A stretch of 64,000 bases of DNA, taken from IMG/VR virus record IMGVR_UViG_3300034072_000926, positions 310,001 through 374,000 of that record. The stretch is one strand, 5' to 3'. The notes beneath the pieces are model-generated. The model worked only from the letters and a program-made list of their open reading frames with translations, was not told the origin of the DNA and did no database searches. The position numbers and the translations under genes are program-made. Positions 42,291-63,900 of the stretch are shown here, piece by piece. Every line of letters begins with the position of its first letter. Position 1 is the stretch's first letter.

Positions 42291-42340
42291 AAACGATCTC
42301 CTTTACCGCGCCAGTATAGCAGAATAAAGGAGACAGTCTA
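42291..42340 (-). promoter_or_regulatory. Early promoter/RBS cassette with dyad around -10
   Basis: TAGAC-N17-TATACT; arms tctccttta/taaaggaga (9 bp, includes RBS). Confidence 0.75.
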
Positions 42341-42347
42341 CCACTTT

Positions 42348-42647
42348 TTAGGCATCTTTCAATTCTGCCTTTGCTGCGCGGATTGCAGAAACAATGTCGA
42401 GGCCAGCGGCTTTATGCTTCTTGACCAGTTCGGTCAACTTCTGCGCGGCTTCGGGATCGTGAGGTTCGAACTCCCGATACTCAACATTATGTTCATGTGC
42501 CCAGAGGCGACCGTGTTCCTCTGCATAGAGCAGCACAGAGAAGCTCGTATAGTAGGCTTCGCGGTCACCGCCGTCTGGGCCTGGGAAATACATGGTAGGG
42601 AGATAGCCGCCTGCAGTCTCTTCGATCTTCACAAATGCCTTGCACAT
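42348..42647 (-). CDS. Hypothetical protein
   Basis: Own cassette promoter and RBS. Confidence 0.75.
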   Translation of the reverse strand: MCKAFVKIEETAGGYLPTMYFPGPDGGDREAYYTSFSVLLYAEEHGRLWAHEHNVEYREFEPHDPEAAQKLTELVKKHKAAGLDIVSAIRAAKAELKDA

Positions 42648-42702
42648 CTTTGATCTCCCGTTGTCTACCTACCCACTTTAGCAGAATAGGTGACAACGTC
42701 AA
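42648..42702 (-). promoter_or_regulatory. Early promoter/RBS cassette with dyad around -10
   Basis: TTGAC-N17-TAAAGT; arms cgttgtc+accta/taggt+gacaacg. Confidence 0.8.
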
Positions 42703-42708
42703 CCACTT

Positions 42709-42897
42709 TTATTGCAAGTCATTCATTTGCTGTTCGAGGGCAACGGCAGATGCTTCGAACTTGACTGCGAGTCGCTGGTCAGCGGCAATGCGCCAGTCAC
42801 CGGGTTGATGGAGTTTCGCTTCCAGAATATGGAACGCAGCTTGGCGACGAAAGTTTGCGATGGCGGTTTCGAACTGTTCTCGAGTTGCGTGGGCCAT
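42709..42897 (-). CDS. Hypothetical protein
   Basis: AGGAGG RBS and own promoter inside the upstream ORF. Confidence 0.7.
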   Translation of the reverse strand: MAHATREQFETAIANFRRQAAFHILEAKLHQPGDWRIAADQRLAVKFEASAVALEQQMNDLQ

Positions 42898-43403
42898 ATC
42901 GTTTCCTCCTGCTGTTGTGCATCCACTTTACAGGAAACTGGATCCGTGTCAACAGAATAGGTGAGATCCAGGGCGATAAGATCGTTGAGATCATAGAAGC
43001 AGAACGACTGACCCGGTTTATCGGGGAAGGATACTTGGAAACAGGGCGTGTCATTCTTCCCCTGAGATCCAATCCAACGCTGACGTTCCTCCCATCCAAG
43101 TGTTGTGTGCTCATAGGGAATTGGAAACTCGTCCTTAGGCGCACGATCAAAGAAGATGACGCTCTTGATCATCCCTACCTTACCCTTGTGTAGCCAAGAC
43201 CAATGTTTGTGCTGCTCGCTTACAACGACATAGGCACCGACAACCAAACCCTCAAGGGCTGCTCGACCGCGATCATTGATCTCAACGTCGTAGAGATTGC
43301 GGGTCACGTGATTGCCAAGACCCGCGACATCATTTGTGAAACGATGTTTGCCAGTCTTCTGAATCTGCATGAGAAGCGAGATTTGGTCCGGAGATAGTGT
43401 CAT
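42723..43403 (-). CDS. Hypothetical protein with a read-through tail across the next cassette
   Basis: ATGA-coupled start; the last ~75 aa run over a promoter and out of frame over 42709-42897. Confidence 0.6.
   Translation of the reverse strand: MTLSPDQISLLMQIQKTGKHRFTNDVAGLGNHVTRNLYDVEINDRGRAALEGLVVGAYVVVSEQHKHWSWLHKGKVGMIKSVIFFDRAPKDEFPIPYEHTTLGWEERQRWIGSQGKNDTPCFQVSFPDKPGQSFCFYDLNDLIALDLTYSVDTDPVSCKVDAQQQEETIWPTQLENSSKPPSQTFVAKLRSIFWKRNSINPVTGALPLTSDSQSSSKHLPLPSNSK
42898..42952 (-). promoter_or_regulatory. Early promoter/RBS cassette inside an ORF
   Basis: TTGAC-N17-TAAAGT; arms atcca/tggat; AGGAGG. Confidence 0.75.
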
Positions 43404-43708
43404 GTCATATCACTCTTGCTGATCTTCTTGGGTTCGGCTTTCTTGTTCTGATACTGGAATTCTCCAGAGCCGTCAAGATGCTCAGTCTTCGAACCATCAT
43501 CCCAGGTCGTGTAAACCATTCCAGTCGAGGCAACCTTTCGGCTCACCACAAAACGAATGTTCGTCCACTCGTTTGCAGTCAAGTGAGCCTTAGCTTCTTC
43601 CTTCGACTTGTAGGGAACGCCCTGTTTGTCCTGGACGCGACCCACAATCATATGTTCGCCGCCAGCTTTACTCTTAGCCAGAACCCTGATTATTTCTTTT
43701 TCTTCCAT
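43400..43708 (-). CDS. Hypothetical protein
   Basis: 102 aa, tiles the operon. Confidence 0.65.
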   Translation of the reverse strand: MEEKEIIRVLAKSKAGGEHMIVGRVQDKQGVPYKSKEEAKAHLTANEWTNIRFVVSRKVASTGMVYTTWDDGSKTEHLDGSGEFQYQNKKAEPKKISKSDMT

Positions 43709-43857
43709 GCGTCACCGTGAATTGGATGTTCCCACCAAGGGCCTTCGTGATACCAAGTGAAAGGCTTCTTGCTCTGCTCGAGAATCTCTTCTACTCGCTT
43801 GGAACGTCTCGGCCAAATGCCGAAGATACTCATGAAGCCTTCCCAGAATTCTTTCAC
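43690..43857 (-). CDS. Small Trp-rich hypothetical protein (55 aa)
   Basis: Hand-translated MKEFWEGFMSIFGIW...WKKKK; GTGA overlap. Confidence 0.5.
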   Translation of the reverse strand: MKEFWEGFMSIFGIWPRRSKRVEEILEQSKKPFTWYHEGPWWEHPIHGDAWKKKK

Positions 43858-44078
43858 CTTGCGAGTTCCTGAGCCAGTTCCTCAGCGGTCATGCCGCTGT
43901 CATAGTCCAGACCAAGCTGACGCAAAGTGCGATTGTGGAGACGCATCGCTGCATCATCCTGCCCCAGTCCGGTCAGCTCTGCGATTCGATCCATTGCGAG
44001 AACGCGCCACTTTGTGAACGTGGTCTCGGCTTTGCCTTGTCCGTAGGTATTGGATTCCTTGGATTCCCAGATGTTCAT
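43854..44078 (-). CDS. Hypothetical protein
   Basis: GAGGAGG RBS; ATGA overlap. Confidence 0.7.
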   Translation of the reverse strand: MNIWESKESNTYGQGKAETTFTKWRVLAMDRIAELTGLGQDDAAMRLHNRTLRQLGLDYDSGMTAEELAQELAR

Positions 44079-44347
44079 CGTTTCCTCCTCTTTCCGAATA
44101 GCTTGTCGAACGGTCCGTCCATCCCAAAGGGGTTCTCGAACTTCTCCTCAAACTTTCCAAACGGATCGTTCTCGGCCTCTTCTTCGAGAATACGGATTCG
44201 TTCCTTCAAACGAGCATTGTCCTCTCGCACCCTCTGAACGTCAACGAGCGCATGATAGACTGCGGTAAGCCAAGCGCGCTTGACCTCGACTTTCTTGGCC
44301 TGATCGCCCGATATGGCTGCTCTCAGGGCGGTTAGGTCGACTTTCAT
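44075..44347 (-). CDS. Coiled-coil hypothetical protein
   Basis: Start moved to ATG 44347 (ATGA overlap). Confidence 0.65.
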   Translation of the reverse strand: MKVDLTALRAAISGDQAKKVEVKRAWLTAVYHALVDVQRVREDNARLKERIRILEEEAENDPFGKFEEKFENPFGMDGPFDKLFGKRRKR

Positions 44348-44502
44348 TTGATCTTCCTTCCCATGAGGAACATATGGACCAACATAGCTATCATACAAGC
44401 AAGAATCGCAAATACAAAGAAGCCTTCCATCGGGCCGATTTCCTTGTCACGGCGACGATGATAAGGATTAGAAGAGATTGCGACTATGGAGACCGGATTC
44501 AT
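44344..44502 (-). CDS. Small single-TM protein (52 aa)
   Basis: Hand-translated; ATGA overlaps at both ends. Confidence 0.55.
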   Translation of the reverse strand: MNPVSIVAISSNPYHRRRDKEIGPMEGFFVFAILACMIAMLVHMFLMGRKIK

Positions 44503-44609
44503 TTGATCTTCGCTGCCTGATATTCGGGAGACTTTGGACCAAAGGTCTCATAGGTGTATTGCACCCAATCGTCCATGAAATCCTGTTCATCAGTCTCGCA
44601 CTCTGGCAT
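44499..44609 (-). CDS. Small acidic protein (36 aa)
   Basis: MPECETDEQDF...KIK fills the gap in a coupled operon. Confidence 0.45.
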   Translation of the reverse strand: MPECETDEQDFMDDWVQYTYETFGPKSPEYQAAKIK

Positions 44610-44616
44610 GCGGTCG

Positions 44617-44943
44617 TCAGTCGATTGTTCGGTCGCCATCAACGCTATCCTTATACCGGCGGGCCCACTTCTCACACTTGGCGAGCAGAATGCTGTTGAT
44701 CTGTTCGTCCGTTGTCTCGGGCGCATGAAGGAAAATGATATCGAGAGCGCAAGCGATGACGTCAATGGCTTCACCCACGACACCATCCTTGCCTTCCTCG
44801 CCGCCTGCTCTAACGATTGCGATTTCCTCATTGAGTTCACGCAATTCATCCGAGGTGTGGCGACTTGCATCCTCGAGTTGGCGTCCATTCTCAATAAGAA
44901 ATGAGAAGTGACGCACGATGTCGATGGGGTTCTGTGTATCCAT
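44617..44943 (-). CDS. MazG-like (all-alpha) nucleotide pyrophosphohydrolase
   Basis: DELRELNEEI...GVVGEAIDVIACALD: ExxE...ExxD metal-binding pattern. Confidence 0.65.
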   Translation of the reverse strand: MDTQNPIDIVRHFSFLIENGRQLEDASRHTSDELRELNEEIAIVRAGGEEGKDGVVGEAIDVIACALDIIFLHAPETTDEQINSILLAKCEKWARRYKDSVDGDRTID

Positions 44944-44977
44944 ATCCTACCTTTAGCAGAATGTGGTTAGACGTCAA
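44944..44977 (-). promoter_or_regulatory. Early promoter with short leader
   Basis: TTGAC-N17-TAAAGG. Confidence 0.7.
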
Positions 44978-44983
44978 CCAGTT

Positions 44984-45400
44984 TTATGCCTCGGTCTTGA
45001 ACTGCGAATGGCGCTGCACATCAGTGTAGGCCCAGGTGCGGGGAGGGATGCCGCCGTTCTCAGCGACCATGCCGGCGATCCAGGGGTGGACCAGACCGTT
45101 CATCCGACAACGGAGATACATGAAGGGGAAGTATTCATCCCCGATGTTGACCTCGCGGGGATAGAAAGCACGGAGGGCCTGGGCAGCACCATAGTAGGTC
45201 TGCGCGATGTAGTGCATCCGGTGGTTAGCGCCGTGGACGACCTTCTCGCCGTCCTCATTCTCGTGAGGGAGATCGACCATGGAGTTCAGCGCATCAATGG
45301 CCTTCCAGACCAGATCCTCGAAGACCCGGTGCGAAGCCTGGCTATCGTCGAAGATCTTGATCTGTGCGTTGGTCGCGGGGTAGTTTCCGATCTTGGCCAT
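44984..45400 (-). CDS. Hypothetical protein
   Basis: Own cassette promoter and RBS. Confidence 0.75.
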   Translation of the reverse strand: MAKIGNYPATNAQIKIFDDSQASHRVFEDLVWKAIDALNSMVDLPHENEDGEKVVHGANHRMHYIAQTYYGAAQALRAFYPREVNIGDEYFPFMYLRCRMNGLVHPWIAGMVAENGGIPPRTWAYTDVQRHSQFKTEA

Positions 45401-45454
45401 TTGCTGTCTCCTGTTCCGTTATCGCTGTAATAACAGAACAGGAGAGCAAATCAA
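45401..45454 (-). promoter_or_regulatory. Early promoter/RBS cassette with dyad around -10
   Basis: TTGAT-N17-TATTAC; arms tctcctgttc+gttat/ataac+gaacaggaga (include RBS). Confidence 0.8.
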
Positions 45455-45963
45455 CCAGAAATTGAAGAAAAACGCCCTGATTCGATGTCATTGAAAAGAT
45501 TTTCAATGATCTGTTTGGCCGAAGTCAAATCGAGTGGTTGGATCGTTTGCACTTTTGCCGGAATGAGGCTCCGTGCAATGTTTAGCTGATTTCCGATATA
45601 GAGACCAACGATAAGCGAATCGCCGACTTTCTCTTGTTTGGTAATGATAGCAGGCGTAGAAGCAACCTGCAAATCCATTTCCCATCCGAGGTATTCTTGT
45701 TTGAAGCTCGTTGAGGTAACATTGACGAGATTGTTCACGTCAGACAGACCCCGCTCGCCGCCTATTTTGGGAGACTCGAAAGGCGTCCGAGGGTTGAGAG
45801 GATCGTTGGGTCCATAAACGAGTGTGAGATTTTCGCCGTCACTATCGAGTGAAACCCGAACTGAGTTATATCGATTTCGAACATTCTTGTTGAAGAACGT
45901 TGTCTCAATTCGAGTCTTCAACTCATCAAGGAAACCGATCTTCACCGACAAAACTTCAAACAT
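45451..45963 (-). CDS. Hypothetical protein
   Basis: 170 aa; GAGGTAGG RBS; promoter at 46022. Confidence 0.7.
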   Translation of the reverse strand: MFEVLSVKIGFLDELKTRIETTFFNKNVRNRYNSVRVSLDSDGENLTLVYGPNDPLNPRTPFESPKIGGERGLSDVNNLVNVTSTSFKQEYLGWEMDLQVASTPAIITKQEKVGDSLIVGLYIGNQLNIARSLIPAKVQTIQPLDLTSAKQIIENLFNDIESGRFSSISG

Positions 45964-46026
45964 ATCCTACCTCGTTAGTGTTTGTAATAATACAATTTAG
46001 ATAACGCTAAATTTTCACAATGTCAA
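45964..46026 (-). promoter_or_regulatory. Sigma70-type promoter
   Basis: TTGAC-N17-TTATCT; no clear dyad. Confidence 0.55.
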
Positions 46027-46045
46027 CCGACATTAGGAGCGAATC

Positions 46046-46345
46046 TCACCTACCCGGAAGATACCTCAGGATCCACTTGGGATAGCCCTCAGGCGTCATA
46101 ATGATGTCGGGAATTGCCACGGCATCATTGCCAGTTTCGACCCAACCGTTACCGAGACAGTGGTCACAGATCGACCGCTTGCTTCGCATACTGATCAGAC
46201 ATATCTCGCGGTTCCACTGCCCGTGCCCCTTGCATGTTGGACACTTTGCGTCGAGCGTCGCACCACGCGCCGCAAGTGGAATACAGGTGAACGCATGGGG
46301 ATCGTCGACCCCAGTAGTGATGTGAACTTTCGACGGGTGACTCAA
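46046..46345 (-). CDS. Zn-finger protein (CxxCxGxG pairs)
   Basis: CPTCKGHG...CDHCLGNG; TTGA overlap start. Confidence 0.65.
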   Translation of the reverse strand: MSHPSKVHITTGVDDPHAFTCIPLAARGATLDAKCPTCKGHGQWNREICLISMRSKRSICDHCLGNGWVETGNDAVAIPDIIMTPEGYPKWILRYLPGR

Positions 46346-46728
46346 TTTGTTTCCTCTTCGATAAATTCCTGCCAGAGCTCGCCGGTCCACTCATAGACGC
46401 CAGCAAGTGGTCCCTTTGGAATCGTCAGCGTGGCACCGCGGAACATTGCTCCCTGCGACCGAACCACCAGAAACGCCCATGAATGATCCGTTACCCTTAC
46501 ATGCTTGAGATGTTCAGGCATAGTGATGACGGTGCGGCCACAGTCGAACCCCAGACCCTGTTCGGGACCGATAGTGCGAGCCGGTATACGGGGCGGCGGG
46601 GGAGGTGGCGGGGGAGGAATGTATGGCGACCGCAGCCAAATGGGACGGTATTCAGGCGAGTCGGGATGATCCGCCGAACCGTTCGTCCATCGTGGATAGT
46701 TCCAGAAATCGAGGGGTTCGGGGGTCAT
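46342..46728 (-). CDS. Pro-rich hypothetical protein
   Basis: ATGA overlap; PPPPPPPP run. Confidence 0.65.
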   Translation of the reverse strand: MTPEPLDFWNYPRWTNGSADHPDSPEYRPIWLRSPYIPPPPPPPPPRIPARTIGPEQGLGFDCGRTVITMPEHLKHVRVTDHSWAFLVVRSQGAMFRGATLTIPKGPLAGVYEWTGELWQEFIEEETN

Positions 46729-47000
46729 TGCAGTTCAATGCCCAATTCGATCATCAGCGCATCCAATTCGGATTCGCCACCGATATAGAAGCCCGTCATG
46801 TTGCAGCCCAGGTCAGCCCAAACATTCACCTTGTCTGCGCTAATACGGAGCCCGTAGCCGCCATCGGTCATTGAAGACCGAACACCTTTGTATTCCCAGG
46901 AATCAACGCTGGGACTGGGCTTCTCAGCAAGGGAGCCTTCCCGCTTGATAAAGCGATGGATAGCTTCGACCTTTGCTGCAATGCCTGCGTCGGGAACCAT
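46725..47000 (-). CDS. Hypothetical protein
   Basis: Own cassette. Confidence 0.75.
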   Translation of the reverse strand: MVPDAGIAAKVEAIHRFIKREGSLAEKPSPSVDSWEYKGVRSSMTDGGYGLRISADKVNVWADLGCNMTGFYIGGESELDALMIELGIELQ

Positions 47001-47058
47001 GTTCGATCTCCTGTTTGTGCCTATATGTTCACAATAAAGGAAATAGGTGGAAAGTCAA
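47001..47058 (-). promoter_or_regulatory. Early promoter/RBS cassette
   Basis: TTGAC-N17-TATTGT; arms cctat/atagg; AGGAGATCG. Confidence 0.8.
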
Positions 47059-47063
47059 CACCT

Positions 47064-47282
47064 TTATTCAGTTTCTCCGAGGGCCCATTTGCTGTAAGAC
47101 ATGCCGCGAGCGCGGCGCATACGAGCAAGCTTGATGTCGGCTTCGGTCGGACCACGCGCAATTCGAGCAGCTTCGACCGCGTCCTGATGCTTCTGCAGAG
47201 CAGCAATTGCGCCATCTACGTCGCCGGTCATGATCGCATAATCCATTGCGCGAGAAATGGGGTTCCGAGTCCTACGTGCCAT
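47064..47282 (-). CDS. Basic hypothetical protein
   Basis: Own cassette. Confidence 0.75.
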   Translation of the reverse strand: MARRTRNPISRAMDYAIMTGDVDGAIAALQKHQDAVEAARIARGPTEADIKLARMRRARGMSYSKWALGETE

Positions 47283-47336
47283 TTGTTAACTCCTGCTGTT
47301 GTGTCTCCACTTTAGCAGAAACTGGAGAGGAGTCAA
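47283..47336 (-). promoter_or_regulatory. Early promoter/RBS cassette with dyad
   Basis: TTGAC-N17-TAAAGT; arms tctcca/tggaga. Confidence 0.8.
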
Positions 47337-47359
47337 CACCTATTCTCCATACATCCATA

Positions 47360-47758
47360 TTATACCGCGTAGTCGGGATCCAGAGTGCAGAGATCGTGGC
47401 CGAGGTCGCGAACATAGGAATCATTCCGATTCGCGCTGTTGATCAGCCGGGCGCAAGTCGTGCAATAATACCGCTGGGTGGAATGGTTATACCAATACGC
47501 ACCAGGGGCTTGACACGCCTCACGATTGCAGTTCTTCCCCTTCTCGCCCTTGCCTTCGCCGTGGGGCTTGTCGGTCTGCAGATTGTCAATATATTCGGCC
47601 GACATATAGACGCCTTCGGGCGAAGTATATCCCTGCGTCTTTTTTGGTTCAGGTTCGCGACCGAGCCGAACATCAGGGTAGATGAATTTGGCCTTGCGAT
47701 TGAGACGAGCAGCGCGCATCTGGTTGAAGGTCTTGGGCATCTTGCGAAGCTTGGCCAT
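47360..47758 (-). CDS. Cys-containing (Zn-binding-like) hypothetical protein
   Basis: CNREAC...YYCTTCA; start moved to ATG 47758 after AGGAGATCG. Confidence 0.75.
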   Translation of the reverse strand: MAKLRKMPKTFNQMRAARLNRKAKFIYPDVRLGREPEPKKTQGYTSPEGVYMSAEYIDNLQTDKPHGEGKGEKGKNCNREACQAPGAYWYNHSTQRYYCTTCARLINSANRNDSYVRDLGHDLCTLDPDYAV

Positions 47759-47815
47759 ACGATCTCCTGTTGTTTCCTGTTGTCTTACGTTTAACAGGTG
47801 TGACCCTGCTGTCAA
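47759..47815 (-). promoter_or_regulatory. Early promoter/RBS cassette with dyad
   Basis: TTGAC-N17-TAAACG; arms cctgtt/aacagg. Confidence 0.8.
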
Positions 47816-47821
47816 CCAGTA

Positions 47822-47989
47822 TTAGATACGGCTGATAACCAGTTTTGCACCCGGAGGGGCGACGCTCATTTGCTTATGGATAGGACGACCCATCGCGAAA
47901 TCAGTCGAGTTGTAGCGATAATCCCAAGTCCCCCAACGATGCACGTAGGTGACCTTGTAGCCGAACAGCCTGAGAATCTTACGAAACAT
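47822..47989 (-). CDS. Small hypothetical protein (55 aa)
   Basis: Hand-translated MFRKILRLFGYKVTY...; AGGAGA RBS and own promoter. Confidence 0.65.
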   Translation of the reverse strand: MFRKILRLFGYKVTYVHRWGTWDYRYNSTDFAMGRPIHKQMSVAPPGAKLVISRI

Positions 47990-48035: not shown

Positions 48036-48079
48036 CCACATTATTGACTAGAGTAGAATGGAGGTTTTAGCAAAGATAT

Positions 48080-57936: not shown

Positions 57937-58485
57937 TTACTCCACCAGTTTTAGCACCTTATTTCGGAGCGTCAACCAGAATCCATCCTGTTTTGGCGCG
58001 CGGTTGAGATATTCTCCAATTTCCTTCAGACGATCCTGGTCAGGGATAGGCCTCTCAACCTTCGTGAGATCGAAGCGAGTGCGGAAATGATCCTCGGTCT
58101 CCTCCCAAATCTCCCGGCCTTGCTTCAATTGCATCGCTCGGCTGATTGGGTTATTCTTTCGGAAGCCACTGCGGACTTCCTCGAAGTCCCATGACTTCCA
58201 AACCGATGTGCAGACTTCCCACAGAGCCCCGTAGATGCCCCTCCGACGCCACGCGGGTGCCGTGTAAGCCCCGACGATCGTAACGCGCTTGTCGTGGGCG
58301 ATAGGGGCATAGAAGACGCAACTGATCAGCTCATTGTCGAGGAAGAATGCTGCGTAATGATATTGTTCGCTGCGCGGCCATTTTGAGGACCGACCAACTC
58401 TGTCCAGTTCGGCCTTGTATTCATCCCAGACGCCAAGCATCTCAGGCTTTTTACGGATTTGTTGGGTTTGAAAGGTGAAGTCCAT
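57937..58485 (-). CDS. GNAT family N-acetyltransferase
   Basis: IVGAYTAPAWRRRGIYGAL (motif A, R/QxxGxG/A-like), N..SRAM. Confidence 0.75.
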   Translation of the reverse strand: MDFTFQTQQIRKKPEMLGVWDEYKAELDRVGRSSKWPRSEQYHYAAFFLDNELISCVFYAPIAHDKRVTIVGAYTAPAWRRRGIYGALWEVCTSVWKSWDFEEVRSGFRKNNPISRAMQLKQGREIWEETEDHFRTRFDLTKVERPIPDQDRLKEIGEYLNRAPKQDGFWLTLRNKVLKLVE

Positions 58486-58521
58486 AGCTACCCTATTAAG
58501 GCGACTATGGACTTGTGTCAA
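58486..58521 (-). promoter_or_regulatory. Sigma70-type promoter
   Basis: TTGAC-N17/18-T(T)AATA, short leader. Confidence 0.55.
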
Positions 58522-58524
58522 CAT

Positions 58525-59142
58525 TTAGAGAAAGGAAACGCTCACCTTTTTGTCCAAACCCGCAGCTTTCAGAGGAATTTCGAACAAGGATTGGATCGAC
58601 TGTCGGGCATTCTGTTCGGCTAGTCCACGTAGGTTTTCCGACTGTGACTTGAAGCTGGCTTGGATCTTGATCGTATTCGCCCTCATAAGCTCTGCACGGG
58701 TATCAGAGTTTACACTGAACAGCCACGAATTGTTATCGTAGGTCTCGTGGGTATTGGCCGGCATACGGTCGAGGATCATAAGATCACGTGGCAAAGTGAT
58801 TGAAAGACCCTGCTGATCACTCTTGACCATCCCAGCATTGACACGGCTCAGGTCAACGCGATACTGAATGTCGGCGGACACGATATCGGTTTGCTTTGCG
58901 TCCATTCCCATGCGCGAGACATCTGAGGTCGCAACACCGTTGAGCTTGCTCGTCATCACCAGCAATTGGTTCTGAGCTTGGATTGAGCTGATGCTCGTCC
59001 TGATCACAGTCTCGACATCTGGTCCTACAACCTTGGTCTTTGTGACGACCTTCTCCTCAGGAACTTTCATGCAACCTGAGAGTTGAAGCAACCCACAGAA
59101 GGTGACCGCTCCGAGTAGAGCAATCGTTGTGCGCTTGTTCAC
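58525..59142 (-). CDS. Lipoprotein-like/membrane-anchored protein, DUF4230-like
   Basis: GTG start after GAGGAG; signal with LSGC; ...YRVDLS...ITLP...AEQNARQSIQSLF pattern. Confidence 0.6.
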   Translation of the reverse strand: MNKRTTIALLGAVTFCGLLQLSGCMKVPEEKVVTKTKVVGPDVETVIRTSISSIQAQNQLLVMTSKLNGVATSDVSRMGMDAKQTDIVSADIQYRVDLSRVNAGMVKSDQQGLSITLPRDLMILDRMPANTHETYDNNSWLFSVNSDTRAELMRANTIKIQASFKSQSENLRGLAEQNARQSIQSLFEIPLKAAGLDKKVSVSFL

Positions 59143-60311
59143 AGCTTCTCCTCTAGGGCTTCGAGGTTGTTCTTCGTCTTGGACGCATATTCGCGAAGGT
59201 GCGGGCCCATGTAATCCACGATGGGCTTCTTGCAACCGGCCTTGATCCAGTTCTTCGCTCGCTTAATTGCCTCGCTGGGCATGTGATGTGCCGTTGCCAT
59301 AAACTGAGTGAGGTCAGTAGTCTGACATGCCCCGCTCTCCAACAGTTGCGCATCTTTCTTGTTGAGCTTCTTCATGAGTCGTGCCATATTGTAGGTCACG
59401 AAATAGAATGCTGCTCGATGATGTTCGGCGCCTTGAAGTGATACCACGCTGCCAGGAATCTTTGCCGCTGGGTCAACTACGAAGCGATTGACCATCGACG
59501 CGCCTTCATTGCTGTTCACGCTGTAGATCGCATAGCTGGTGAACTGATAAAACCCGAGACTCAACAACTTGTCGCCCAATGCCGGAATGCTCTGGATGTA
59601 AGATTCGCCAGCATTGCGAAGCAAGGTATCGAGCATCACATAATTGAACTTGCCGTTGAAACTCGGCATGATCTCGGTCATACCGTAAGCCGCCAACTGT
59701 CGACCTTTGATTCGACCCGTTACATCGCGCAGGACATAACACTGGAAATCGTCGACATTCAGCTTGTCGCACAAGCTGACAAAATCGATATTCGAGTGAG
59801 CGAATTGTGCCTGGGTATTGATTTCGGTTACGAAAGTCTTGATACCCTTGATGTCAGGATTGCCTTCCTGATAGCGATGGACGATATAGTCGGCGTTCTT
59901 CTGCGTGGCACCGCTCACACCCTTGATTGCCAGTTTCCGATCCCACAGAACTCGAAGATTCTGAACGAAATTGACCTCGGCGTTATCAGGCAGTGGGATG
60001 ATATTTCCCTTGTCATCCTTCGGCTTATGACCGAGCATCGTTGCCGCAAGACCGCCGACCTTGGCGTTATTGAGGTATTTGAAGTCCACGTTCATCGGCA
60101 TCGTTTTGGATAGGTTGGTCGCGAAGACCGGCACATCGTTAGCCGTTGAGATTGTGGTCGTGAGTGTCTTCGTTCCCATCGGTGCCGCTGCAACGGGCTG
60201 AACCGTCGGGGAGAGGAAGTATCCTGCGGGGATCGCCAGTGCAAAGACCGTGGTCATCACAGGGTTCCGCACCGCGTATGCCTTTATCTTATTCTGCAAA
60301 TTCGTAATCAA
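59139..60311 (-). CDS. Signal-anchored hypothetical protein, possibly lysozyme-like fold
   Basis: TTG start after GGGGGAG; N-terminal anchor; TEIMP...SLGFYQFT is reminiscent of lytic transglycosylases (tentative). Confidence 0.65.
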   Translation of the reverse strand: MITNLQNKIKAYAVRNPVMTTVFALAIPAGYFLSPTVQPVAAAPMGTKTLTTTISTANDVPVFATNLSKTMPMNVDFKYLNNAKVGGLAATMLGHKPKDDKGNIIPLPDNAEVNFVQNLRVLWDRKLAIKGVSGATQKNADYIVHRYQEGNPDIKGIKTFVTEINTQAQFAHSNIDFVSLCDKLNVDDFQCYVLRDVTGRIKGRQLAAYGMTEIMPSFNGKFNYVMLDTLLRNAGESYIQSIPALGDKLLSLGFYQFTSYAIYSVNSNEGASMVNRFVVDPAAKIPGSVVSLQGAEHHRAAFYFVTYNMARLMKKLNKKDAQLLESGACQTTDLTQFMATAHHMPSEAIKRAKNWIKAGCKKPIVDYMGPHLREYASKTKNNLEALEEKL

Positions 60312-60371
60312 AAGTGGTCTCCCCCTATTGCGTTCACATCCTGGATGTAAAGGGTTAAGAGTTAATGTCAA
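60312..60371 (-). promoter_or_regulatory. Sigma70-type promoter
   Basis: TTGAC-N17-TACATC. Confidence 0.65.
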
Positions 60372-60413
60372 CCACTTAGTTCACGGTATTGAAATCTTAG
60401 AGTAAAGAATAAG

Positions 60414-61184
60414 TTAATGGGCTTTTAACTTAAGGGCAACTTTTGATTGCACAATAATATTGCGCCAGCCCATCGAAACCTTCCAATCCTTGCTGAGGAT
60501 CTTTTCGATCTCCTCGAAGGTGTAGAGTTCCTTCTCTTTCGCGACAATCATCATTGCCCGCGATTCCTGATTGATAACCTCAGGAATATGGCTGCGCTTG
60601 TTCTTAACGTAACCGCGCCGGTTGAGGAACTTCTCGCGCCATTCCTCGGCTGCATCCCAGTCCTTTTGGAACTTGTGCTTATCGGTTGAGGTTATGACCA
60701 ATCGGACAGCCTTTTTACCCGACTTAACATCCTGATGACCGAATTGCCATCCGTGCTGTTTGGCGAGTTCCGTGAATGCTGCTAAATCGGCTTTATTCTG
60801 TTCCTTGAGGGATTTCTGCTGGTCTTTGAAGACATTAGCGTTCTGCAGAATATCGTCCTGGACCTTTTCGTCCCACCGCAGGAAGTCAGTCGTTTTGATC
60901 TTGCGTCCGTGAATGATCACGTGATTTTGACCGGCGCCGTAAGAGCCGCTTTCGTATTTGTGCCAGACCAAAGGTTCGGAGATTGCGCGAAAGGTAACAA
61001 ACTTCGCGTTGCTACCTTGATTGCGCTTGAATTTTGCGGGGACGACGCGGATCACCATTTCGGTGAACTTGAAGCCGTTCCTCAGGAGGGCCTTTGCAAT
61101 CCCTTGGAAGTTTTCGGTTTGACGTCCAAAATCGTGATGGAGGATCTCACCAACACTCAATACGCGCTCACCAAACTTTTCCAA
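60414..61184 (-). CDS. Basic hypothetical protein
   Basis: TTG start after AGGAGATCG; 256 aa. Confidence 0.75.
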   Translation of the reverse strand: MEKFGERVLSVGEILHHDFGRQTENFQGIAKALLRNGFKFTEMVIRVVPAKFKRNQGSNAKFVTFRAISEPLVWHKYESGSYGAGQNHVIIHGRKIKTTDFLRWDEKVQDDILQNANVFKDQQKSLKEQNKADLAAFTELAKQHGWQFGHQDVKSGKKAVRLVITSTDKHKFQKDWDAAEEWREKFLNRRGYVKNKRSHIPEVINQESRAMMIVAKEKELYTFEEIEKILSKDWKVSMGWRNIIVQSKVALKLKAH

Positions 61185-61238
61185 GGTCGATCTCCTGTTG
61201 CTACCTAGTCACAGTAGCAGAACAGGAGATCATGTCAA
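61185..61238 (-). promoter_or_regulatory. Early promoter/RBS cassette with dyad around -10
   Basis: TTGAC-N17-TACTGT; arms gatctcctgtt+gctac/gtagc+aacaggagatc (16 bp, include RBS). Confidence 0.85.
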
Positions 61239-61244
61239 CCAGTT

Positions 61245-61496
61245 TTAGAAGTGGAATTCGCCGATCTGTTGCTTGAGCTGCTGAATTCCCTGCGGGGTGA
61301 GCTTGTATTCGCGCCCCGTTTCAGCAATGCGAGTCACATAACCTTTTTCAAGGAGACAACCGAGCGCATTCTGATCTAGGGAAGCTCTATTGACAGCCCA
61401 GTGCCAATAGTTTTTCTTGGCCTTCATAGAAGTTCCGCGAAGGCCGATGATCCGCATAGCAAGCTTGACCTGCTCTTGATTCATGGTGTGGTTCAT
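61245..61496 (-). CDS. Small protein, possible winged-helix
   Basis: L..LLEKGYV......Y.LTPQGI; TAATG overlap. Confidence 0.65.
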   Translation of the reverse strand: MNHTMNQEQVKLAMRIIGLRGTSMKAKKNYWHWAVNRASLDQNALGCLLEKGYVTRIAETGREYKLTPQGIQQLKQQIGEFHF

Positions 61497-61917
61497 TAGA
61501 AGCCTTTCAGCTGGAGAGTGAAGTTGCGCTTCTTCTGATTGGCCTTTTCGACCATCGAAGCCGGGAGATCATAATAATGAGCAACCCAGTGACCACGACG
61601 GATAGTTTCCACCTTGCGCTCGATCTTGCCCTTGTCTTTGCCGCGGGTAATGGTGCGCGTAGTCACCTTGGTCTTGCGACGGAACTTCTCCAGCGTGAAC
61701 AGCCGAACCGCTTCCGATCCTTGCTCCGGATCTCGAAATGCTTGCTTTCATCCTGACGATTCTGTTCGTCATGTTCTTCCAGCTTTTGCTTGAGGGCATA
61801 GTAGAGAGGGCCGCACTTGTCCCAGCTGGCATCATATTCGATACGTGTGAGCAATTGACGAATCGCCCCGGCCGTTGCCTTGATTTCGAGGCTTGCCATA
61901 TCGCTGTCATGTGCCAT
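61496..61917 (-). pseudogene. Probable single gene split by a 1-nt frameshift near 61700, or two coupled ORFs 61663-61917 and 61496-61666
   Basis: Codon usage switches frame at ...cgg ttc ggc tg ttc acg ctg gag aag...; second frame ends in a TAATG overlap with the next gene. Confidence 0.45.
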
Positions 61918-61973
61918 CTTCGATCTCCTTATTGCCTATAACCCTGTTTTAACACATAGGTGGACAGCGTCAA
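61918..61973 (-). promoter_or_regulatory. Early promoter/RBS cassette
   Basis: TTGAC-N17-TAAAAC; arms cctat/atagg; AGGAGATCG. Confidence 0.8.
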
Positions 61974-61976
61974 CCA

Positions 61977-62375
61977 TTATTTCCGCATGCGAGCGATCAG
62001 GTCAGCCTTTGCCTGTGCGCTCTGTTGGCGACGCTCCTGCCAGGTCGGCTTGGGCTTTTGCTTTGCAGGAATAGGAACCAGATCCAACAAGCCGTCATCA
62101 TCGCGACTGAACAGCTTGTATTCGCCGACACGACGATCCATCAGCATTTGATGGAGGGCTTCATGACGGAGAGCGATCATCTTCGACTCGTCGCTCATTT
62201 CCTCGACCATCTCTCGAATGTTGACCGGGATCGAAATCGCCGACAACGTGATTGACATTGCGGGCTTGTAATAGTCAGTGAGGGCAAGGATCCGACCGAT
62301 CCGATCGTTTATTTTCGGATCCTTGAGCATTGCTTCCACTTGGGCGTCCATGGCCTTGTTGAATTCCTCGCTCAT
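61977..62375 (-). CDS. Hypothetical protein
   Basis: TAATG overlap start 62375. Confidence 0.7.
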   Translation of the reverse strand: MSEEFNKAMDAQVEAMLKDPKINDRIGRILALTDYYKPAMSITLSAISIPVNIREMVEEMSDESKMIALRHEALHQMLMDRRVGEYKLFSRDDDGLLDLVPIPAKQKPKPTWQERRQQSAQAKADLIARMRK

Positions 62376-62638
62376 TAGCACGACTCCCTCTGTTCGAATT
62401 GGATATAGTCCGCAGCATCGTAGAGGCCGAGGCGATTGAGCACCGCACGGGCATCAGCGAGCTGTTCATCCAGTGGGCGCTGCGTCTGTGCATATGCGGG
62501 AATGGACTTCAGATCTTCGAAGATCGAGAACGCCTTGTTTTCCGTGCCGAAAAGCGCACGAGCGACCATTCGATCCTTCGCTTGTGCGATGGCTTCGTCC
62601 TTGGATCCTGCTTCGTAGCTGCTGGGTGCGGTCTGCAT
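62375..62638 (-). CDS. Hypothetical protein
   Basis: Own cassette. Confidence 0.75.
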   Translation of the reverse strand: MQTAPSSYEAGSKDEAIAQAKDRMVARALFGTENKAFSIFEDLKSIPAYAQTQRPLDEQLADARAVLNRLGLYDAADYIQFEQRESC

Positions 62639-62696
62639 TTTCGATCTCCGTTTATTGCCTACTCACCTGTTTTAACAGATTACTGGGTAGGGTCAA
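62639..62696 (-). promoter_or_regulatory. Early promoter/RBS cassette with dyad
   Basis: TTGAC-N17-TAAAAC; arms cctactca/tgggtagg. Confidence 0.8.
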
Positions 62697-62901
62697 CCAG
62701 AATTTCACATTCTTTTGGCAAAACAAGGAATGTCTCTCCCTGATATTCGCCCTCGGTGATCCTTATGTAGAAATACCGCGTATCGTATTCTTCGCCATCC
62801 CAGAAGTAGCCATCGAATACTGCATTGGCTTCGACTGCACCGGTCCAAGGAGTAGAAAACGTGGCGCGCAGTTTGTCGCCCTTTTTGAGTTCATTCTGCA
62901 T
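62680..62901 (-). CDS. Small SH3/KOW-like beta protein (tentative)
   Basis: Start moved to ATG 62901 after GAGGAGG; LKKGDKLRATF...; stop lies inside the next promoter spacer. Confidence 0.65.
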   Translation of the reverse strand: MQNELKKGDKLRATFSTPWTGAVEANAVFDGYFWDGEEYDTRYFYIRITEGEYQGETFLVLPKECEILVDPTQ

Positions 62902-62911
62902 CACTGCCTCC

Positions 62912-63100
62912 TCAATATTCGACATGGAGTTCGACACTCTGCAGACTTCCCTTGATGTCATAGATGACATCAGTGACAGTGAAATATCCCTCAGGGGTTC
63001 TGATGCGTTCGCCGACACGAGGAACATGACAGCTCTGATACTGCGCGATTTCCGTCCAGCAGCTATACCGTTCCCGGTAGACAGTGATTGTCAGTTCCAT
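62912..63100 (-). CDS. Small beta protein
   Basis: Start moved to ATG 63100 after AGGAGATCG; VPRVGERI...FTVTDVIY. Confidence 0.75.
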   Translation of the reverse strand: MELTITVYRERYSCWTEIAQYQSCHVPRVGERIRTPEGYFTVTDVIYDIKGSLQSVELHVEY

Positions 63101-63155
63101 GTTCGATCTCCTGTTTCTGTTGTCCACAGTTTAGCAGGATAGGTGAACAAGTCAA
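63101..63155 (-). promoter_or_regulatory. Early promoter/RBS cassette with dyad
   Basis: TTGAC-N17-TAAACT; arms ttgtccac/gtgaacaa (7/8). Confidence 0.8.
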
Positions 63156-63160
63156 CCAAT

Positions 63161-63191
63161 AAAAAAGGGAAGTGTTTCCACTTCCCTTTTT
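63161..63191. terminator. Strong, probably bidirectional terminator
   Basis: aaaaagggaagtg-tttc-cacttcccttttt. Confidence 0.85.
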
Positions 63192-63365
63192 GATCTTTCA
63201 TCAGCTTCACGGCATTATCCCGTCTTCAGCACCCTTATCCGAGCCGTGTTAACTTCCTTGAGTATGCAATGATATCATAACAACGGAACACTCAAGGTTT
63301 GCAGCTGATGCTTCCTAGCCCATGATCTGCGGACTACAAAAGGAGCCGGGGGCACCGAATCTGTT
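63161..63365 (-). ncRNA. Candidate ~200-nt structured small RNA
   Basis: Own promoter (63371-63398), three nested stems, terminator, no ORF with an RBS. Confidence 0.55.
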
Positions 63366-63370
63366 TCTAG

Positions 63371-63398
63371 AACTTAACTCCTAACCATAAAGAGTCAA
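63371..63398 (-). promoter_or_regulatory. Sigma70-type promoter not followed by an RBS/ORF
   Basis: TTGAC-N17-TAAGTT. Confidence 0.6.
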
Positions 63399-63402
63399 GC
63401 TA

Positions 63403-63846
63403 TTATTTTGCGGATTTCAACAATTCCTCAAGGGAGATACGCTCCACAAACCGTGCGCTAGGCATGTGGAAGAGAATCTGGGTTTCGCCCTTCTTCGTCT
63501 TCTTGCCGTTGACCTCGTAGATGCTCAGAGCCATCGAATCATTTGCACGATCGGCCAAGACCTTCAAGTCCTCGATGGACTGTCTTGGGAACCATTCAAA
63601 GACCTGGGCCATTGATTCAAAACCGAAATACCATTCCCGGCGATCCCGATGAACCCATTCGTATGTGGCCTTCTTGCCCTTACCCTTGCCTTCCCACCAG
63701 TCCTTGAGCAGCGGATCCAGTTCCGGACCAACGTGAACAGTAGGAGGAACATCTCCGCGCTCGATAGCCGCTTCGCTGATCTTGAACCCAAAGCCCCGGC
63801 TGTAAATGCCTTCGTCCTTGTTGTTCTCGAACCGGAAAATGAGCAT
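63403..63846 (-). CDS. Hypothetical protein
   Basis: Own cassette; FRFEN...G.Y....H.GP..D...W.FGF.S pattern. Confidence 0.75.
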   Translation of the reverse strand: MLIFRFENNKDEGIYSRGFGFKISEAAIERGDVPPTVHVGPELDPLLKDWWEGKGKGKKATYEWVHRDRREWYFGFESMAQVFEWFPRQSIEDLKVLADRANDSMALSIYEVNGKKTKKGETQILFHMPSARFVERISLEELLKSAK

Positions 63847-63900
63847 TTCGATCTCCTCTTGCTTACCTGTTCATTTTAGCAGAATAGGTGAGCAAATCAA
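63847..63900 (-). promoter_or_regulatory. Early promoter/RBS cassette with dyad around -10
   Basis: TTGAT-N17-TAAAAT; arms ttgcttacctgttc/gaataggtgagcaa (14 bp, 2 G-T). Confidence 0.85.

What the first reader, a model, noticed from the sequence alone, without database searches (positions are those of the whole stretch)
42291..63900. About 30 single-gene expression cassettes whose -10 box lies inside a sequence-variable, pairing-conserved inverted repeat
Seen: 30 minus-strand units read (A-rich)-TTGAY-N17-TAnnnn-leader-(A)GGAGATCG-start, with the 17-nt spacing in nearly all. In about 15 of them a dyad of 7-16 bp has one arm in the -35/-10 spacer and the other downstream of the -10; about 11 more have 5-6 bp. 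Arm sequences differ but pairing is kept: ctcacctgttt/aaacaggtgag (51629), acaccctgg/ccagggtgt (51895), gatctcctgtt/aacaggagatc (61189), actctgttct/agaatagagt (49581), tctccttta/taaaggaga (42297), ttgcttacctgttc/gaataggtgagcaa (63859), cgttgtc..gacaacg (42659). In several the downstream arm is the RBS. The upstream arm is not in the transcript made from that promoter. Established: T4 late genes (e, soc, 49, I-TevI) hide their RBS in hairpins on read-through RNA and free it by initiating inside the stem; N4 vRNAP and Frpo use DNA hairpin promoters; PeSL elements shuffle T4-type modules. Inference: either (a) a DNA cruciform that exposes or gates the -10 under supercoiling or on ssDNA during injection, or (b) an insulation code so each gene is translated only from its own promoter. 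Mismatches fall as G-T on both strands, so neither strand is clearly favoured. Systematic use across a whole early region appears undescribed to me.
Basis: partly seen in the sequence, partly recalled or inferred. Interest (0 to 1): 0.85.

Follow-up and report, generated by a model that had tools for sequence, protein, structure and literature searches.

The report
Promoter cassettes with built-in junction hairpins
An uncultured 465-kb phage puts nearly every small early gene behind the same host-type promoter, and where genes abut about 40% of these promoters carry a real but fast-evolving hairpin that most likely acts on RNA reading in from the upstream gene. This layout is a variant of the PeSL cassettes already described in T4-like phages.

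Summary
The minus strand of 42.3-63.9 kb carries 32 near-identical promoter/SD cassettes. Promoter spacers pair with their own leaders better than with other cassettes' leaders (-14.0 vs -10.7 kcal/mol; 0 of 20000 permutations).

Only 12-14 dyads are strong. The 5-6 bp dyads are at chance level.

The window is IMG/VR contig 3300034072_000926, a 465-kb phage. Across 259 such promoters in about ten related contigs the signal repeats (z = -20).

Three results bear on function:
- Strong stems occur at 43% of promoters abutted by an upstream ORF and at 7% of promoters with a long or empty upstream region (p = 2e-6).
- Interior mismatches favour G.T over A.C on the sense strand in SD-covering stems (33 vs 15).
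- No stem has a U-tract, so none is a canonical terminator.

This favours hairpins on read-through RNA that insulate cassettes, half of them by burying the SD. It argues against a DNA cruciform gating the -10. Stems turn over quickly between orthologues, and SD coverage is not specifically enriched.

The architecture matches PeSLs of phages RB49 and phi1, so it is not undescribed. I call it a new variant of a known kind.

The parts
42290..63900 (-). Array of 32 promoter/SD cassettes serving about 50 small ORFs. It continues past the window end.
   Evidence: PWM scan gives 27 hits at score 14 or more; 5 weaker ones were found by eye.
63859..63900 (-). Cassette 63900. -35 at 63900-63895, -10 at 63878-63873. 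Arms 63895-63882 / 63872-63859 (12 WC + 2 A.C). The SD starts at 63858.
   Evidence: Orthologues in two other genomes carry different strong dyads.
61189..61238 (-). Cassette 61238. Arms 61231-61221 / 61199-61189 (11 WC, extendable to 17 bp with one bulge). The 3' arm is the SD.
   Evidence: Duplex energy -24.5 kcal/mol. Predicted SD unpaired probability 0.00 on read-through RNA and 0.93 on the own transcript.
58478..58521 (-). Cassette 58521 (17-nt spacer). Perfect 10-bp arms 58514-58505 / 58487-58478. The 3' arm contains an in-frame ATG at 58485.
55735..55775 (-). Cassette 55775. Arms 55759-55753 / 55741-55735 plus an outer TCGA pairing. The 3' arm is the SD.
   Evidence: -18.9 kcal/mol.
53217..53257 (-). 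Cassette 53257. Arms 53256-53240 / 53233-53217. The 3' arm starts inside the -10, the loop is 6 nt, and the stem lies upstream of the inferred start site.
   Evidence: -23.1 kcal/mol.
52675..52730 (-). Cassette 52730, preceded by a terminator-like hairpin at about 52790-52750. Imperfect long dyad reaching the SD.
   Evidence: Predicted SD unpaired probability on read-through RNA is 0.01.
51895..51931 (-). Cassette 51931. Arms 51928-51918 / 51905-51895. The 5' arm includes the ACA of the -35, and the 3' arm starts in the -10.
   Evidence: -21.9 kcal/mol; fold z = -3.9.
51627..51663 (-). Cassette 51663. Arms 51658-51646 / 51639-51627 with a 6-nt loop. An outer helix pairs upstream CUCCA with the SD.
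   Evidence: fold z = -4.6.
49033..49091 (-). Cassette 49091. A 19-position imperfect dyad (14 WC, 3 G.T) whose 3' arm is the SD.
49579..49613 (-). Cassette 49613. Arms 49612-49599 / 49592-49579, spanning -35 to spacer and -10 to leader.
47304..47336 (-). Cassette 47336. Arms 47328-47319 / 47313-47304. The 3' arm starts in the -10.
45407..45454 (-). Cassette 45454. The strongest dyad: arms 45445-45430 / 45422-45407 (15 WC + 1 G.T). The 3' arm is the SD and runs up to the ATG.
   Evidence: -27.4 kcal/mol; fold z = -5.0.
42659..42702 (-). Cassette 42702. Arms 42698-42692 / 42665-42659 plus an inner 5-bp helix. The 3' arm abuts the SD.
   Evidence: -22.3 kcal/mol; fold z = -5.9.
42290..42340 (-). 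Cassette 42340 (-35 is TAGACT). The 3' arm is the SD.
   Evidence: The orthologue keeps the pairing through an A-T to T.G change.
32181..32255 (-). Outlying cassette of the same type. A 13-bp dyad runs from the spacer to just inside the ORF, enclosing the -10, the SD and the start codon.
63162..63191 (-). Canonical intrinsic terminator directly upstream of cassette 63155.
51701..51730 (-). Canonical intrinsic terminator upstream of cassette 51663.
54788..54821 (-). Canonical intrinsic terminator after the M23 peptidase gene.

Best explanation
These are PeSL-like composite regulatory cassettes. Each has an A-rich UP-like tract that often holds the upstream stop codon, a host sigma-70 promoter of the alphaproteobacterial RpoD type, a short purine-rich leader and a strong SD.

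Where the upstream ORF abuts the promoter there is no room for a separate terminator. About 40% of such cassettes instead carry a stem-loop built from the only free positions. The 5' arm lies in the pyrimidine-rich -35/-10 spacer. The 3' arm lies anywhere from inside the -10 to the SD.

The cassette's own transcription start is inferred to be a conserved A 12 nt after the first T of the -10. It lies between or after the arms, so the stem can form only on RNA that arrives from upstream. On that RNA the stem insulates the cassette. In about half the cases it buries the SD, so the gene is translated only from its own promoter's transcripts, as with T4 e, soc, 49 and I-TevI. In the rest it puts a stable hairpin directly 3' of the upstream stop codon, acting as an attenuator, 3'-end protector or ribosome barrier.

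Shown: the dyads exist, they exceed chance, they depend on an abutting ORF, and there is a sense-strand bias. Inferred: the start site, that the RNA folds in vivo, and which molecular outcome applies.
For: - Self-versus-cross pairing in the window: -13.97 vs -10.71 kcal/mol, 0 of 20000 permutations.
- The same test over 259 promoters in related contigs: -14.04 vs -10.96, z = -20; 45 duplexes at or below -20 kcal/mol against about 4 expected.
- Ungapped stems scoring 16 or more: 87 real against about 24-26 in chimeras.
- Dependence on context: 68 of 159 promoters with the upstream stop at -34..-21 have a strong stem, against 3 of 44 with the stop more than 60 nt away or no upstream ORF. Fisher p = 2e-6, with equal promoter scores. 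The same holds in four genomes and after dereplicating orthologues (42% vs 4%, p about 4e-5), and for both stem classes.
- Roomy junctions have canonical terminators instead: 41% vs 6%.
- Strand bias: interior G.T vs A.C is 33 vs 15 in SD-covering stems (p = 0.007; dereplicated 20 vs 9, p = 0.03). In strong dyads the sense RNA is 1.46 kcal/mol more stable than the antisense (p = 0.0008).
- Predicted SD unpaired probability: 0.62 on own transcripts, 0.30 on read-through RNA, 0.34 with another cassette's upstream half, and 0.41-0.42 with random or shuffled upstream sequence.
- Between orthologues, double-sided changes keep pairing in 57% of cases against 45% in the null. The orthologue set of cassette 63900 has three different strong dyads.
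- Precedent: PeSL stem-loops overlap the promoter, and one lowered downstream reporter expression as much as the rrnB T1 terminator (PMC2839356). T4 gene e is translated only from transcripts that start inside the hairpin (PMC3014915).
Against: - Only about 40% of tight junctions carry a strong stem.
- Dyad strength is barely conserved between orthologous promoters (Spearman 0.17), and single-sided breaking changes are common.
- There is no fixed register and no position-specific covariation.
- SD-covering and non-SD stems are equally enriched, about 3.3-fold each, so SD occlusion as such is not shown to be the selected property.
- -10-proximal stems show no significant strand bias (20 vs 16).
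- A predicted upstream terminator does not significantly lower the frequency of stems (9/30 vs 78/229).
- No transcription start site, RNA structure or expression data exist for this uncultured phage.
Confidence: 0.5

Rival explanations
1. The stems are only transcriptional attenuators or 3'-end stabilisers for the upstream gene's mRNA, the role proposed for PeSL stem-loops. Overlap with the SD is incidental, because the leader is one of the few places an arm can sit.
For: SD-covering and non-SD stems are equally enriched. Canonical terminators take the same junction position where there is room. The stems depend on an abutting upstream ORF. A PeSL stem-loop reduced downstream lacZ in a transcriptional fusion (PMC2839356).
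Against: Only 1% of stems are followed by a U-tract, and none is G/C-tract rich, so intrinsic termination is not expected. A stem that contains the SD must also block initiation if it forms. A predicted upstream terminator does not remove the stems.
Confidence: 0.2
2. The stem is a translational-coupling device. A ribosome terminating at the stop codon in or next to the -35 melts the stem and exposes the SD, so on read-through RNA the downstream gene is translated only when the upstream gene is.
For: Upstream stop codons cluster at -31 (TAA in the A-tract) and at -21 (the TGA inside TTGACA). The stems need an abutting ORF.
Against: Stem frequency is the same for stops at -21, where the ribosome would reach the 5' arm, and at about -31, where it would not (43% vs 42%; SD-covering stems 26% vs 23%). 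Half the stems do not involve the SD.
Confidence: 0.1
3. The stems have no direct function, or act at the DNA level. They could be by-products of templated (quasi-palindrome) mutation and of frequent recombination between cassettes. They could also be attC-like or PeSL-minicircle-like recombination hairpins on single-stranded DNA.
For: Turnover between orthologues is rapid. Some stems are long and perfect next to weak orthologues. Relatives differ by whole cassettes gained or lost, and one cassette is transposed. A G.T bias on one strand fits ssDNA of that strand as well as RNA.
Against: A purely mutational process should not depend on whether an ORF abuts the promoter. No conserved core site was found. 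No recombinase was seen among the proteins scanned, but I did not look for one across the window. Composition alone is excluded by the chimeric controls.
Confidence: 0.12
4. One reading: a DNA cruciform or single-strand hairpin that exposes or gates the -10 under supercoiling or during injection, as in N4 or Frpo hairpin promoters.
For: -10-proximal stems are centred on the TGnTA junction with 3-9 nt loops and show no significant strand bias.
Against: Promoters of equal quality without an abutting ORF almost never have stems (7%). Loops of 10-23 nt and imperfect arms do not favour extrusion. The promoters are ordinary duplex sigma-70 type with fixed spacing. The -35 and -10 are not paired to each other as in Frpo, and there is no 3-nt-loop, 5-7 bp hairpin as in N4.
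Confidence: 0.05
5. The dyad is an operator for a dimeric phage or host repressor that overlaps the -10.
For: Many arms share an ACCWGT-like core.
Against: Arm sequences, arm spacing (3 to more than 20 nt) and dyad centres (-4 to +10) all vary. Some arms are swapped in orientation. There is no palindromic signal in the logo. The dependence on upstream context is left unexplained.
Confidence: 0.03

Closest known systems
PeSL (promoter-early stem-loop) cassettes of T4-like phages RB49, phi1, T4/PST and KVP40/nt-1 (Arbiol et al. 2010, PMC2839356; Comeau et al. 2014, PMC4122927)
   Same: Dozens of repeated sigma-70-type early promoters sit in regions full of small orphan genes. The upstream stop codon lies in an A/T-rich tract before the -35. 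A stem-loop overlaps the promoter, most often between -35 and -10 or over the -10. An SD and start codon lie at the 3' end. Relatives differ by gain, loss or exchange of whole cassette-plus-gene units.
   Different: The stems here have no GGGG/CCCC tracts and no U-tail. The 5' arm is pyrimidine-rich spacer. In half the cases the 3' arm lies downstream of the start site and is the SD itself. The PeSL subclasses described all lie at or upstream of the start site. The phage is a roughly 465-kb uncultured lineage, distantly related to Agrobacterium phage Atu_ph07, and the promoter consensus is of the Caulobacter RpoD type. Only about 40% of tight junctions have a stem. Minicircles and terminator activity have not been tested.
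T4 genes e, soc, 49 and I-TevI: the SD is sequestered on read-through RNA and freed when transcription starts inside the hairpin (PMC3014915)
   Same: The promoter sits within the region encoding the 5' arm, so the cassette's own transcripts lack that arm and have a free SD. Longer transcripts are predicted to bury the SD.
   Different: In T4 the internal promoter is a late (gp55) promoter, so the device makes a temporal switch for a few genes. Here the internal and upstream promoters are of the same type, and the arrangement recurs at many junctions. Nothing has been tested experimentally.
Integron attC sites
   Same: Both are sequence-variable imperfect inverted repeats with kept pairing, lying at the junction after each mobile single-gene cassette.
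   Different: No conserved R/L core sites, no extrahelical bases and no integrase were identified. The dyads enclose a promoter and are much shorter. The resemblance is in layout only.
N4 vRNAP hairpin promoters and the F-plasmid Frpo single-strand promoter
   Same: An inverted repeat lies at a promoter.
   Different: Those promoters are themselves hairpin DNA. N4 has a 5-7 bp stem and 3-nt loop with conserved bases. Frpo forms its -35 and -10 by intrastrand pairing. Here the promoter is a normal duplex sigma-70 type and the arms are variable.

Membership tests
PeSL cassettes | Many copies of a sigma-70-like early promoter in a region rich in small orphan genes | tested here: met
   32 promoters in 21.6 kb, and 22 more in the next 26 kb, all on one strand. 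Five of the ten larger early-region and adjacent proteins scanned have no Pfam match.
PeSL cassettes | A/T-rich tract upstream of the -35 that holds the upstream gene's stop codon | tested here: met
   An A-tract at -31..-27 that was not part of the scoring matrix. The stop codon peaks at -31 and at -21.
PeSL cassettes | A stable stem-loop within or overlapping the promoter | tested here: met
   Significant against chimeric controls, but present in only about a third of all promoters and 43% of tight junctions.
PeSL cassettes | Stem frequently made of poly-G followed by poly-C | tested here: not met
   0 of 87 strong stems contain GGGG or CCCC.
PeSL cassettes | SD and start codon at the 3' end of the motif | tested here: met
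   GGAGATCGA followed by 3-5 nt and a start codon in most cassettes.
PeSL cassettes | The stem-loop terminates or attenuates upstream transcription | not testable with these tools
   No U-tract follows the stems (1%). This needs a reporter assay or Term-seq.
PeSL cassettes | Cassette-bounded indels and replacements between close relatives (modular shuffling) | tested here: inconclusive
   Compared with contig 3300049044_000033, about ten window genes have no counterpart there. Examples are 61184-58525, 53088-52801, 52672-52337 and 45963-45451. One gene (50738-50556) is transposed. Breakpoints were not mapped to the cassettes.
PeSL cassettes | The host phage is a T4-like myovirus | tested here: inconclusive
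   The tail protein at 17478-20567 is 25% identical to Atu_ph07 and Phosso proteins. Atu_ph07 has 16 T4 core proteins but lies outside the T4-like phages proper (PMC6102473). No core gene lies in the window.
T4 e/soc/49/I-TevI-type SD sequestration | The SD or AUG is paired in a helix on longer transcripts | tested here: met
   44 of 87 strong stems cover the SD. The predicted SD unpaired probability is below 0.2 on read-through RNA in 36% of cassettes, against 14-18% in controls. This is prediction only.
T4 e/soc/49/I-TevI-type SD sequestration | The start site of the proximal promoter lies between the arms | tested here: inconclusive
   The geometry and a conserved A at +12 support it. No start site has been mapped.
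T4 e/soc/49/I-TevI-type SD sequestration | The proximal promoter belongs to a later temporal class than the read-through promoters | tested here: not met
   All promoters in the array share one consensus.
N4 / Frpo hairpin promoters | The promoter is formed by, or recognised as, a DNA hairpin with a conserved short stem and loop | tested here: not met
   Loops of 3 to more than 20 nt, variable arms, and a duplex -35/-10 at fixed 16-nt spacing.

The most novel reading that the evidence does not exclude
Across a whole lineage of roughly 450-kb phages, the -35/-10 spacer doubles as an anti-SD or junction-hairpin arm. Each orphan-gene cassette is then translated only from its own promoter. This would make cassettes plug-and-play units that can be shuffled without inheriting expression from their neighbours. 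It would also mean that PeSL stem-loops in general are translational insulators rather than terminators.
Probability: 0.3. Interest if true: 0.65.

Novelty: new variant of a known kind. Interest (0 to 1): 0.45.

Why it matters
Arrays of tandem strong promoters without terminators should make expression pile up on downstream genes. A hairpin that exists only on RNA arriving from upstream would cancel that effect and let small accessory genes be swapped as self-contained units.

The context dependence found here (stems only where an ORF abuts the promoter), together with the sense-strand bias, gives the first comparative evidence on what promoter-embedded stem-loops of the PeSL type do. It also turns the question 'terminator or translational insulator?' into a simple reporter experiment.

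The work extends the PeSL design from T4-like coliphages to an uncultured giant-phage lineage that probably infects Alphaproteobacteria.

Tried and rejected
- Megablast of the region against GenBank phages found nothing.
- Rfam and tRNA scans of the window found nothing.
- Position-specific covariation across 259 anchored promoters gave no consistent register.
The single usable upstream region has a weak dyad, so a per-hairpin covariation test in the style of R-scape was not possible.
- tblastn of two early proteins against phages gave no Atu_ph07 or Phosso hit.
- The syntenic small-ORF array of Atu_ph07 (277-327 kb) lacks this cassette motif, so no cultured model was found.
- Comparing promoters with and without a predicted upstream terminator gave no significant difference in stem frequency.
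- The test for specific enrichment of SD coverage was negative.
- Stop-codon position (-21 vs -31) does not affect stem frequency. I rejected translational coupling as the main explanation on that basis.
- I rejected an operator reading, because arms and spacing vary.
- I rejected canonical termination, because the stems lack U-tracts.

Full report
WHAT IS THERE

On the minus strand between 42.3 and 63.9 kb I find 32 near-identical units, plus one at 32255. Each unit reads: an A-rich tract, CTGG, TTGAC(w), a 16-nt spacer ending in TGc, TAnnnn, a purine-rich leader of 15-30 nt, (A)GGAGATCGA, 3-5 nt, and a start codon. The spacing is identical in 31 of the 33 units. A simple gene call finds about 50 ORFs behind these promoters, so many units are two-gene or three-gene rather than single-gene. 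Only four or five convincing intrinsic terminators lie on this strand.

WHERE THE WINDOW COMES FROM

A pattern scan of IMG/VR for the cassette found it many times in a handful of very large viral contigs. The window is positions 310001-374000 of IMGVR_UViG_3300034072_000926, a 465-kb contig.

The array continues for at least another 26 kb with 22 more promoters, all on the same strand. A 462-kb relative, 3300049044_000033, is syntenic at about 70-77% nucleotide identity. Others are more distant.

Several results characterise the phage:
- Tail-fibre families match.
- There is no close relative in GenBank phages.
- The 1029-aa tail protein is 25% identical to proteins of Agrobacterium phage Atu_ph07 (490 kb) and Sinorhizobium phage Phosso (469 kb).
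- Atu_ph07 carries 16 T4 core proteins and lies near the Rak2-like group (PMC6102473).

The promoter logo over 259 family members reads TTGAC(a/g/t), then 16 nt ending in TG(C/T), then TA-n-A-w-C. This matches the Caulobacter RpoD consensus TTGaCgS / GCtANAWC quoted in PMC8144410. The likely host is therefore an alphaproteobacterium. That is an inference.

IS THE DYAD MORE THAN CHANCE?

I used a control that keeps composition and conserved motifs. Each promoter's spacer was paired with its own leader, and then with the leaders of the other cassettes.

In the window the own-leader mean is -13.97 kcal/mol, against -10.71 for other leaders. None of 20000 derangements reached the observed mean.

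I then built a scoring matrix from only the -35 and -10 regions, leaving out spacer and leader. This collected 259 distinct promoters from the family, where about 8 hits were expected by chance. In that set:
- The own-leader mean is -14.04, against -10.96 for other leaders (z = -20).
- 45 duplexes are at or below -20 kcal/mol, against about 4 expected.
- Shuffled spacers give -10.0.

A strand-symmetric ungapped stem finder gives 87 stems scoring 16 or more, against about 24-26 in chimeras.

The dyads are therefore real, but only in a subset. That subset is about 12-14 of the window's 33 promoters and roughly a third of the family. Stems of 5-6 bp are what the controls give too.

ANATOMY

- The spacer is only weakly conserved (0.05-0.66 bits per position). 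It is pyrimidine-rich, while the leader is purine-rich.
- Strong stems have a median of 13 positions and a median loop of 10 nt, with a range of 3 to more than 20 nt. There is no fixed register.
- In 44 of the 87 strong stems the 3' arm covers the SD.
- In 40 of the 87 the 3' arm starts inside or just after the -10, so the whole stem lies upstream of the probable start site.
- The probable start site is a conserved A 12 nt after the first T of the -10.
- No strong stem has a G or C tract, and only 1% are followed by a U-rich tail.

TESTS THAT SEPARATE THE HYPOTHESES

1. Context. The upstream ORF's stop codon clusters at -31, a TAA in the A-tract. It also clusters at -21, which is the TGA inside TTGACA.
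   - Promoters with the stop at -34..-21 have a strong stem in 68 of 159 cases.
   - Promoters with the stop more than 60 nt away, or with no same-strand ORF upstream, have one in 3 of 44 cases (p = 2e-6).
   - The duplex energy of this second group (-11.1) equals the chimeric baseline, although its promoter scores are identical.
   - The effect appears in each of four genomes and survives dereplication of orthologues (42% vs 4%). It holds for both stem classes.
   - Roomy junctions carry canonical terminators instead (41% vs 6%).
   - A promoter-intrinsic DNA device would not care what lies upstream.

2. Strand. With a scoring scheme that treats G.T and A.C alike, interior mismatches in SD-covering stems are G.T 33 vs A.C 15 on the sense strand (p = 0.007). 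After dereplication the counts are about 20 vs 9 (p = 0.03). Chimeras show no such bias. The -10-proximal stems give 20 vs 16, which is not significant. In strong dyads the sense RNA is 1.46 kcal/mol more stable than the antisense (p = 0.0008).

3. Consequence for the SD. The predicted unpaired probability of the SD is:
   - 0.62 on transcripts starting at the inferred start site;
   - 0.30 on read-through RNA;
   - 0.34 when the upstream half comes from another cassette;
   - 0.41-0.42 with random genomic or shuffled upstream sequence.
   Individual window cassettes go from about 0.0 to 0.6-0.98, for example 61238, 51663, 45454 and 42340. Folding six window junctions gave z-scores from -1.2 to -5.9, and four of the six were at or below -3.9. 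In some, an outer helix pairs the SD with sequence upstream of the -35.

4. Evolution. Orthologous promoters, defined by orthologous downstream proteins, share dyad strength only weakly (Spearman 0.17). Double-sided changes keep pairing in 57% of cases, against 45% in the null, but single-sided breaking changes are frequent. The orthologues of cassette 63900 show three different strong dyads in three genomes. The stems therefore turn over fast.

5. Specificity for the SD. SD-covering and other stems are equally enriched over chimeras, 44 vs 13 and 40 vs 13. What seems to be kept is a stable hairpin somewhere between the -35 and the start codon. It is not SD occlusion as such.

6. Translational coupling. 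Stem frequency does not differ between stops at -21 and stops at about -31.

INTERPRETATION

The simplest reading is that the stems act on RNA entering from the abutting upstream gene, and that they replace the terminator at junctions that have no room for one.

The geometry also explains why the -10 lies inside the dyad. The -35, the TGnTA and the SD are fixed, so only the spacer and the leader are free to form arms.

Where the 3' arm is the SD, translation from read-through RNA must be blocked if the stem forms. That is the T4 e/soc/49/I-TevI principle (PMC3014915). The molecular outcome for the other half is unresolved. It could be attenuation, 3'-end protection or a barrier to ribosomes.

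I put 0.5 on this RNA-level insulation reading. The remainder goes to:
- a pure attenuator or stabiliser role (0.2);
- a non-functional or recombination-linked origin (0.12);
- translational coupling (0.1);
- a DNA cruciform (0.05);
- an operator (0.03).

COMPARISON WITH WHAT IS KNOWN

Arbiol et al. 2010 described PeSLs in RB49 and phi1. These are repeated sigma-70 early promoters with an A/T-rich upstream tract that holds the upstream stop codon. A stem-loop lies most commonly between -35 and -10 or overlapping the -10, and an SD and start codon lie at the 3' end. The elements are concentrated in orphan-gene regions. They were proposed to attenuate upstream transcription and to mediate cassette shuffling (PMC2839356; PMC4122927).

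The present array shares that architecture. It also shares cassette-level gene gain, loss and transposition between relatives.

It differs in these respects:
- stem composition;
- the absence of a U-tail;
- frequent use of the SD as the 3' arm;
- the host type, as inferred from the promoter consensus;
- the phage lineage.

Systematic use across an early region is therefore not new. The variant and the comparative evidence on function are new.

LIMITS

Everything about RNA folding, start sites and function is inferred from sequence. The family sample is about ten contigs, with orthologue redundancy that is only partly removed. The host is unknown, so no host-promoter control was possible.

Noticed in passing
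window 63160-63398, minus strand; homologues at L005:4921-5151(-) and L074:7516-7745(-): A cassette-type promoter (-35 at 63398-63393) drives about 190 nt with no ORF or SD, ending in the terminator at 63191-63162. The three homologues are 73-75% identical. They fold into a shared structure of 68 pairs, 18 of which have both sides changed with the pair kept, and they share long invariant blocks. No Rfam family matches. An exact 21-nt search of IMG/VR finds only these three copies. This is a candidate new structured phage RNA.
   Followed up: partly
window 53120-53215, minus strand: An unusually long leader of about 140 nt lies between promoter 53257 and the gene starting at 53088. It contains a hairpin of about 20 bp whose stem includes a TTGACT. 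There is no Rfam match.
   Followed up: partly
family-wide; in the window e.g. cassettes 54416, 52730, 52340 and 45454: In 47 of 246 promoters the stop codon of the upstream gene is the TGA inside the -35 hexamer TTGACA. In another roughly 90 it is a TAA in the A-tract at -33..-29. Intergenic space is essentially nil.
   Followed up: yes
window 58478-58527, minus strand: Promoter 58521 has a perfect 10-bp dyad whose 3' arm holds an in-frame ATG 8 nt after the -10. This could be a leaderless start for the GNAT acetyltransferase gene. An alternative ATG at 58524 directly follows the upstream TAA.
   Followed up: no
window 23489-29146, plus strand: Five consecutive ORFs of 324-392 aa look like tandem paralogues next to the large tail genes. 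They were not analysed.
   Followed up: no
window 38432-39715, minus strand: A phage-encoded class I glutamyl/glutaminyl-tRNA synthetase-like gene (Pfam tRNA-synt_1c, E = 3e-79, plus an anticodon-binding domain).
   Followed up: partly
window 50556-50738 and 58525-61184, compared with contig 3300049044_000033 (L019, L056, L016): One small gene cassette sits at a different place in the relative's array. A three-gene block (256, 390 and 205 aa) and several single cassettes are absent from the relative. This fits cassette-wise shuffling.
   Followed up: partly
L091 (Agrobacterium phage Atu_ph07, 277-327 kb): The cultured distant relative has a syntenic one-strand array of about 90 small hypothetical genes. 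It does not use this cassette consensus and shows only a few ordinary TTGACA-N17-TATAAT-like sites.
   Followed up: partly
window 54802-55266 and 58525-59142, minus strand: Among the early-array genes are an M23 peptidase domain protein and a DUF4230 protein. Five of the ten larger proteins scanned have no Pfam match.
   Followed up: partly
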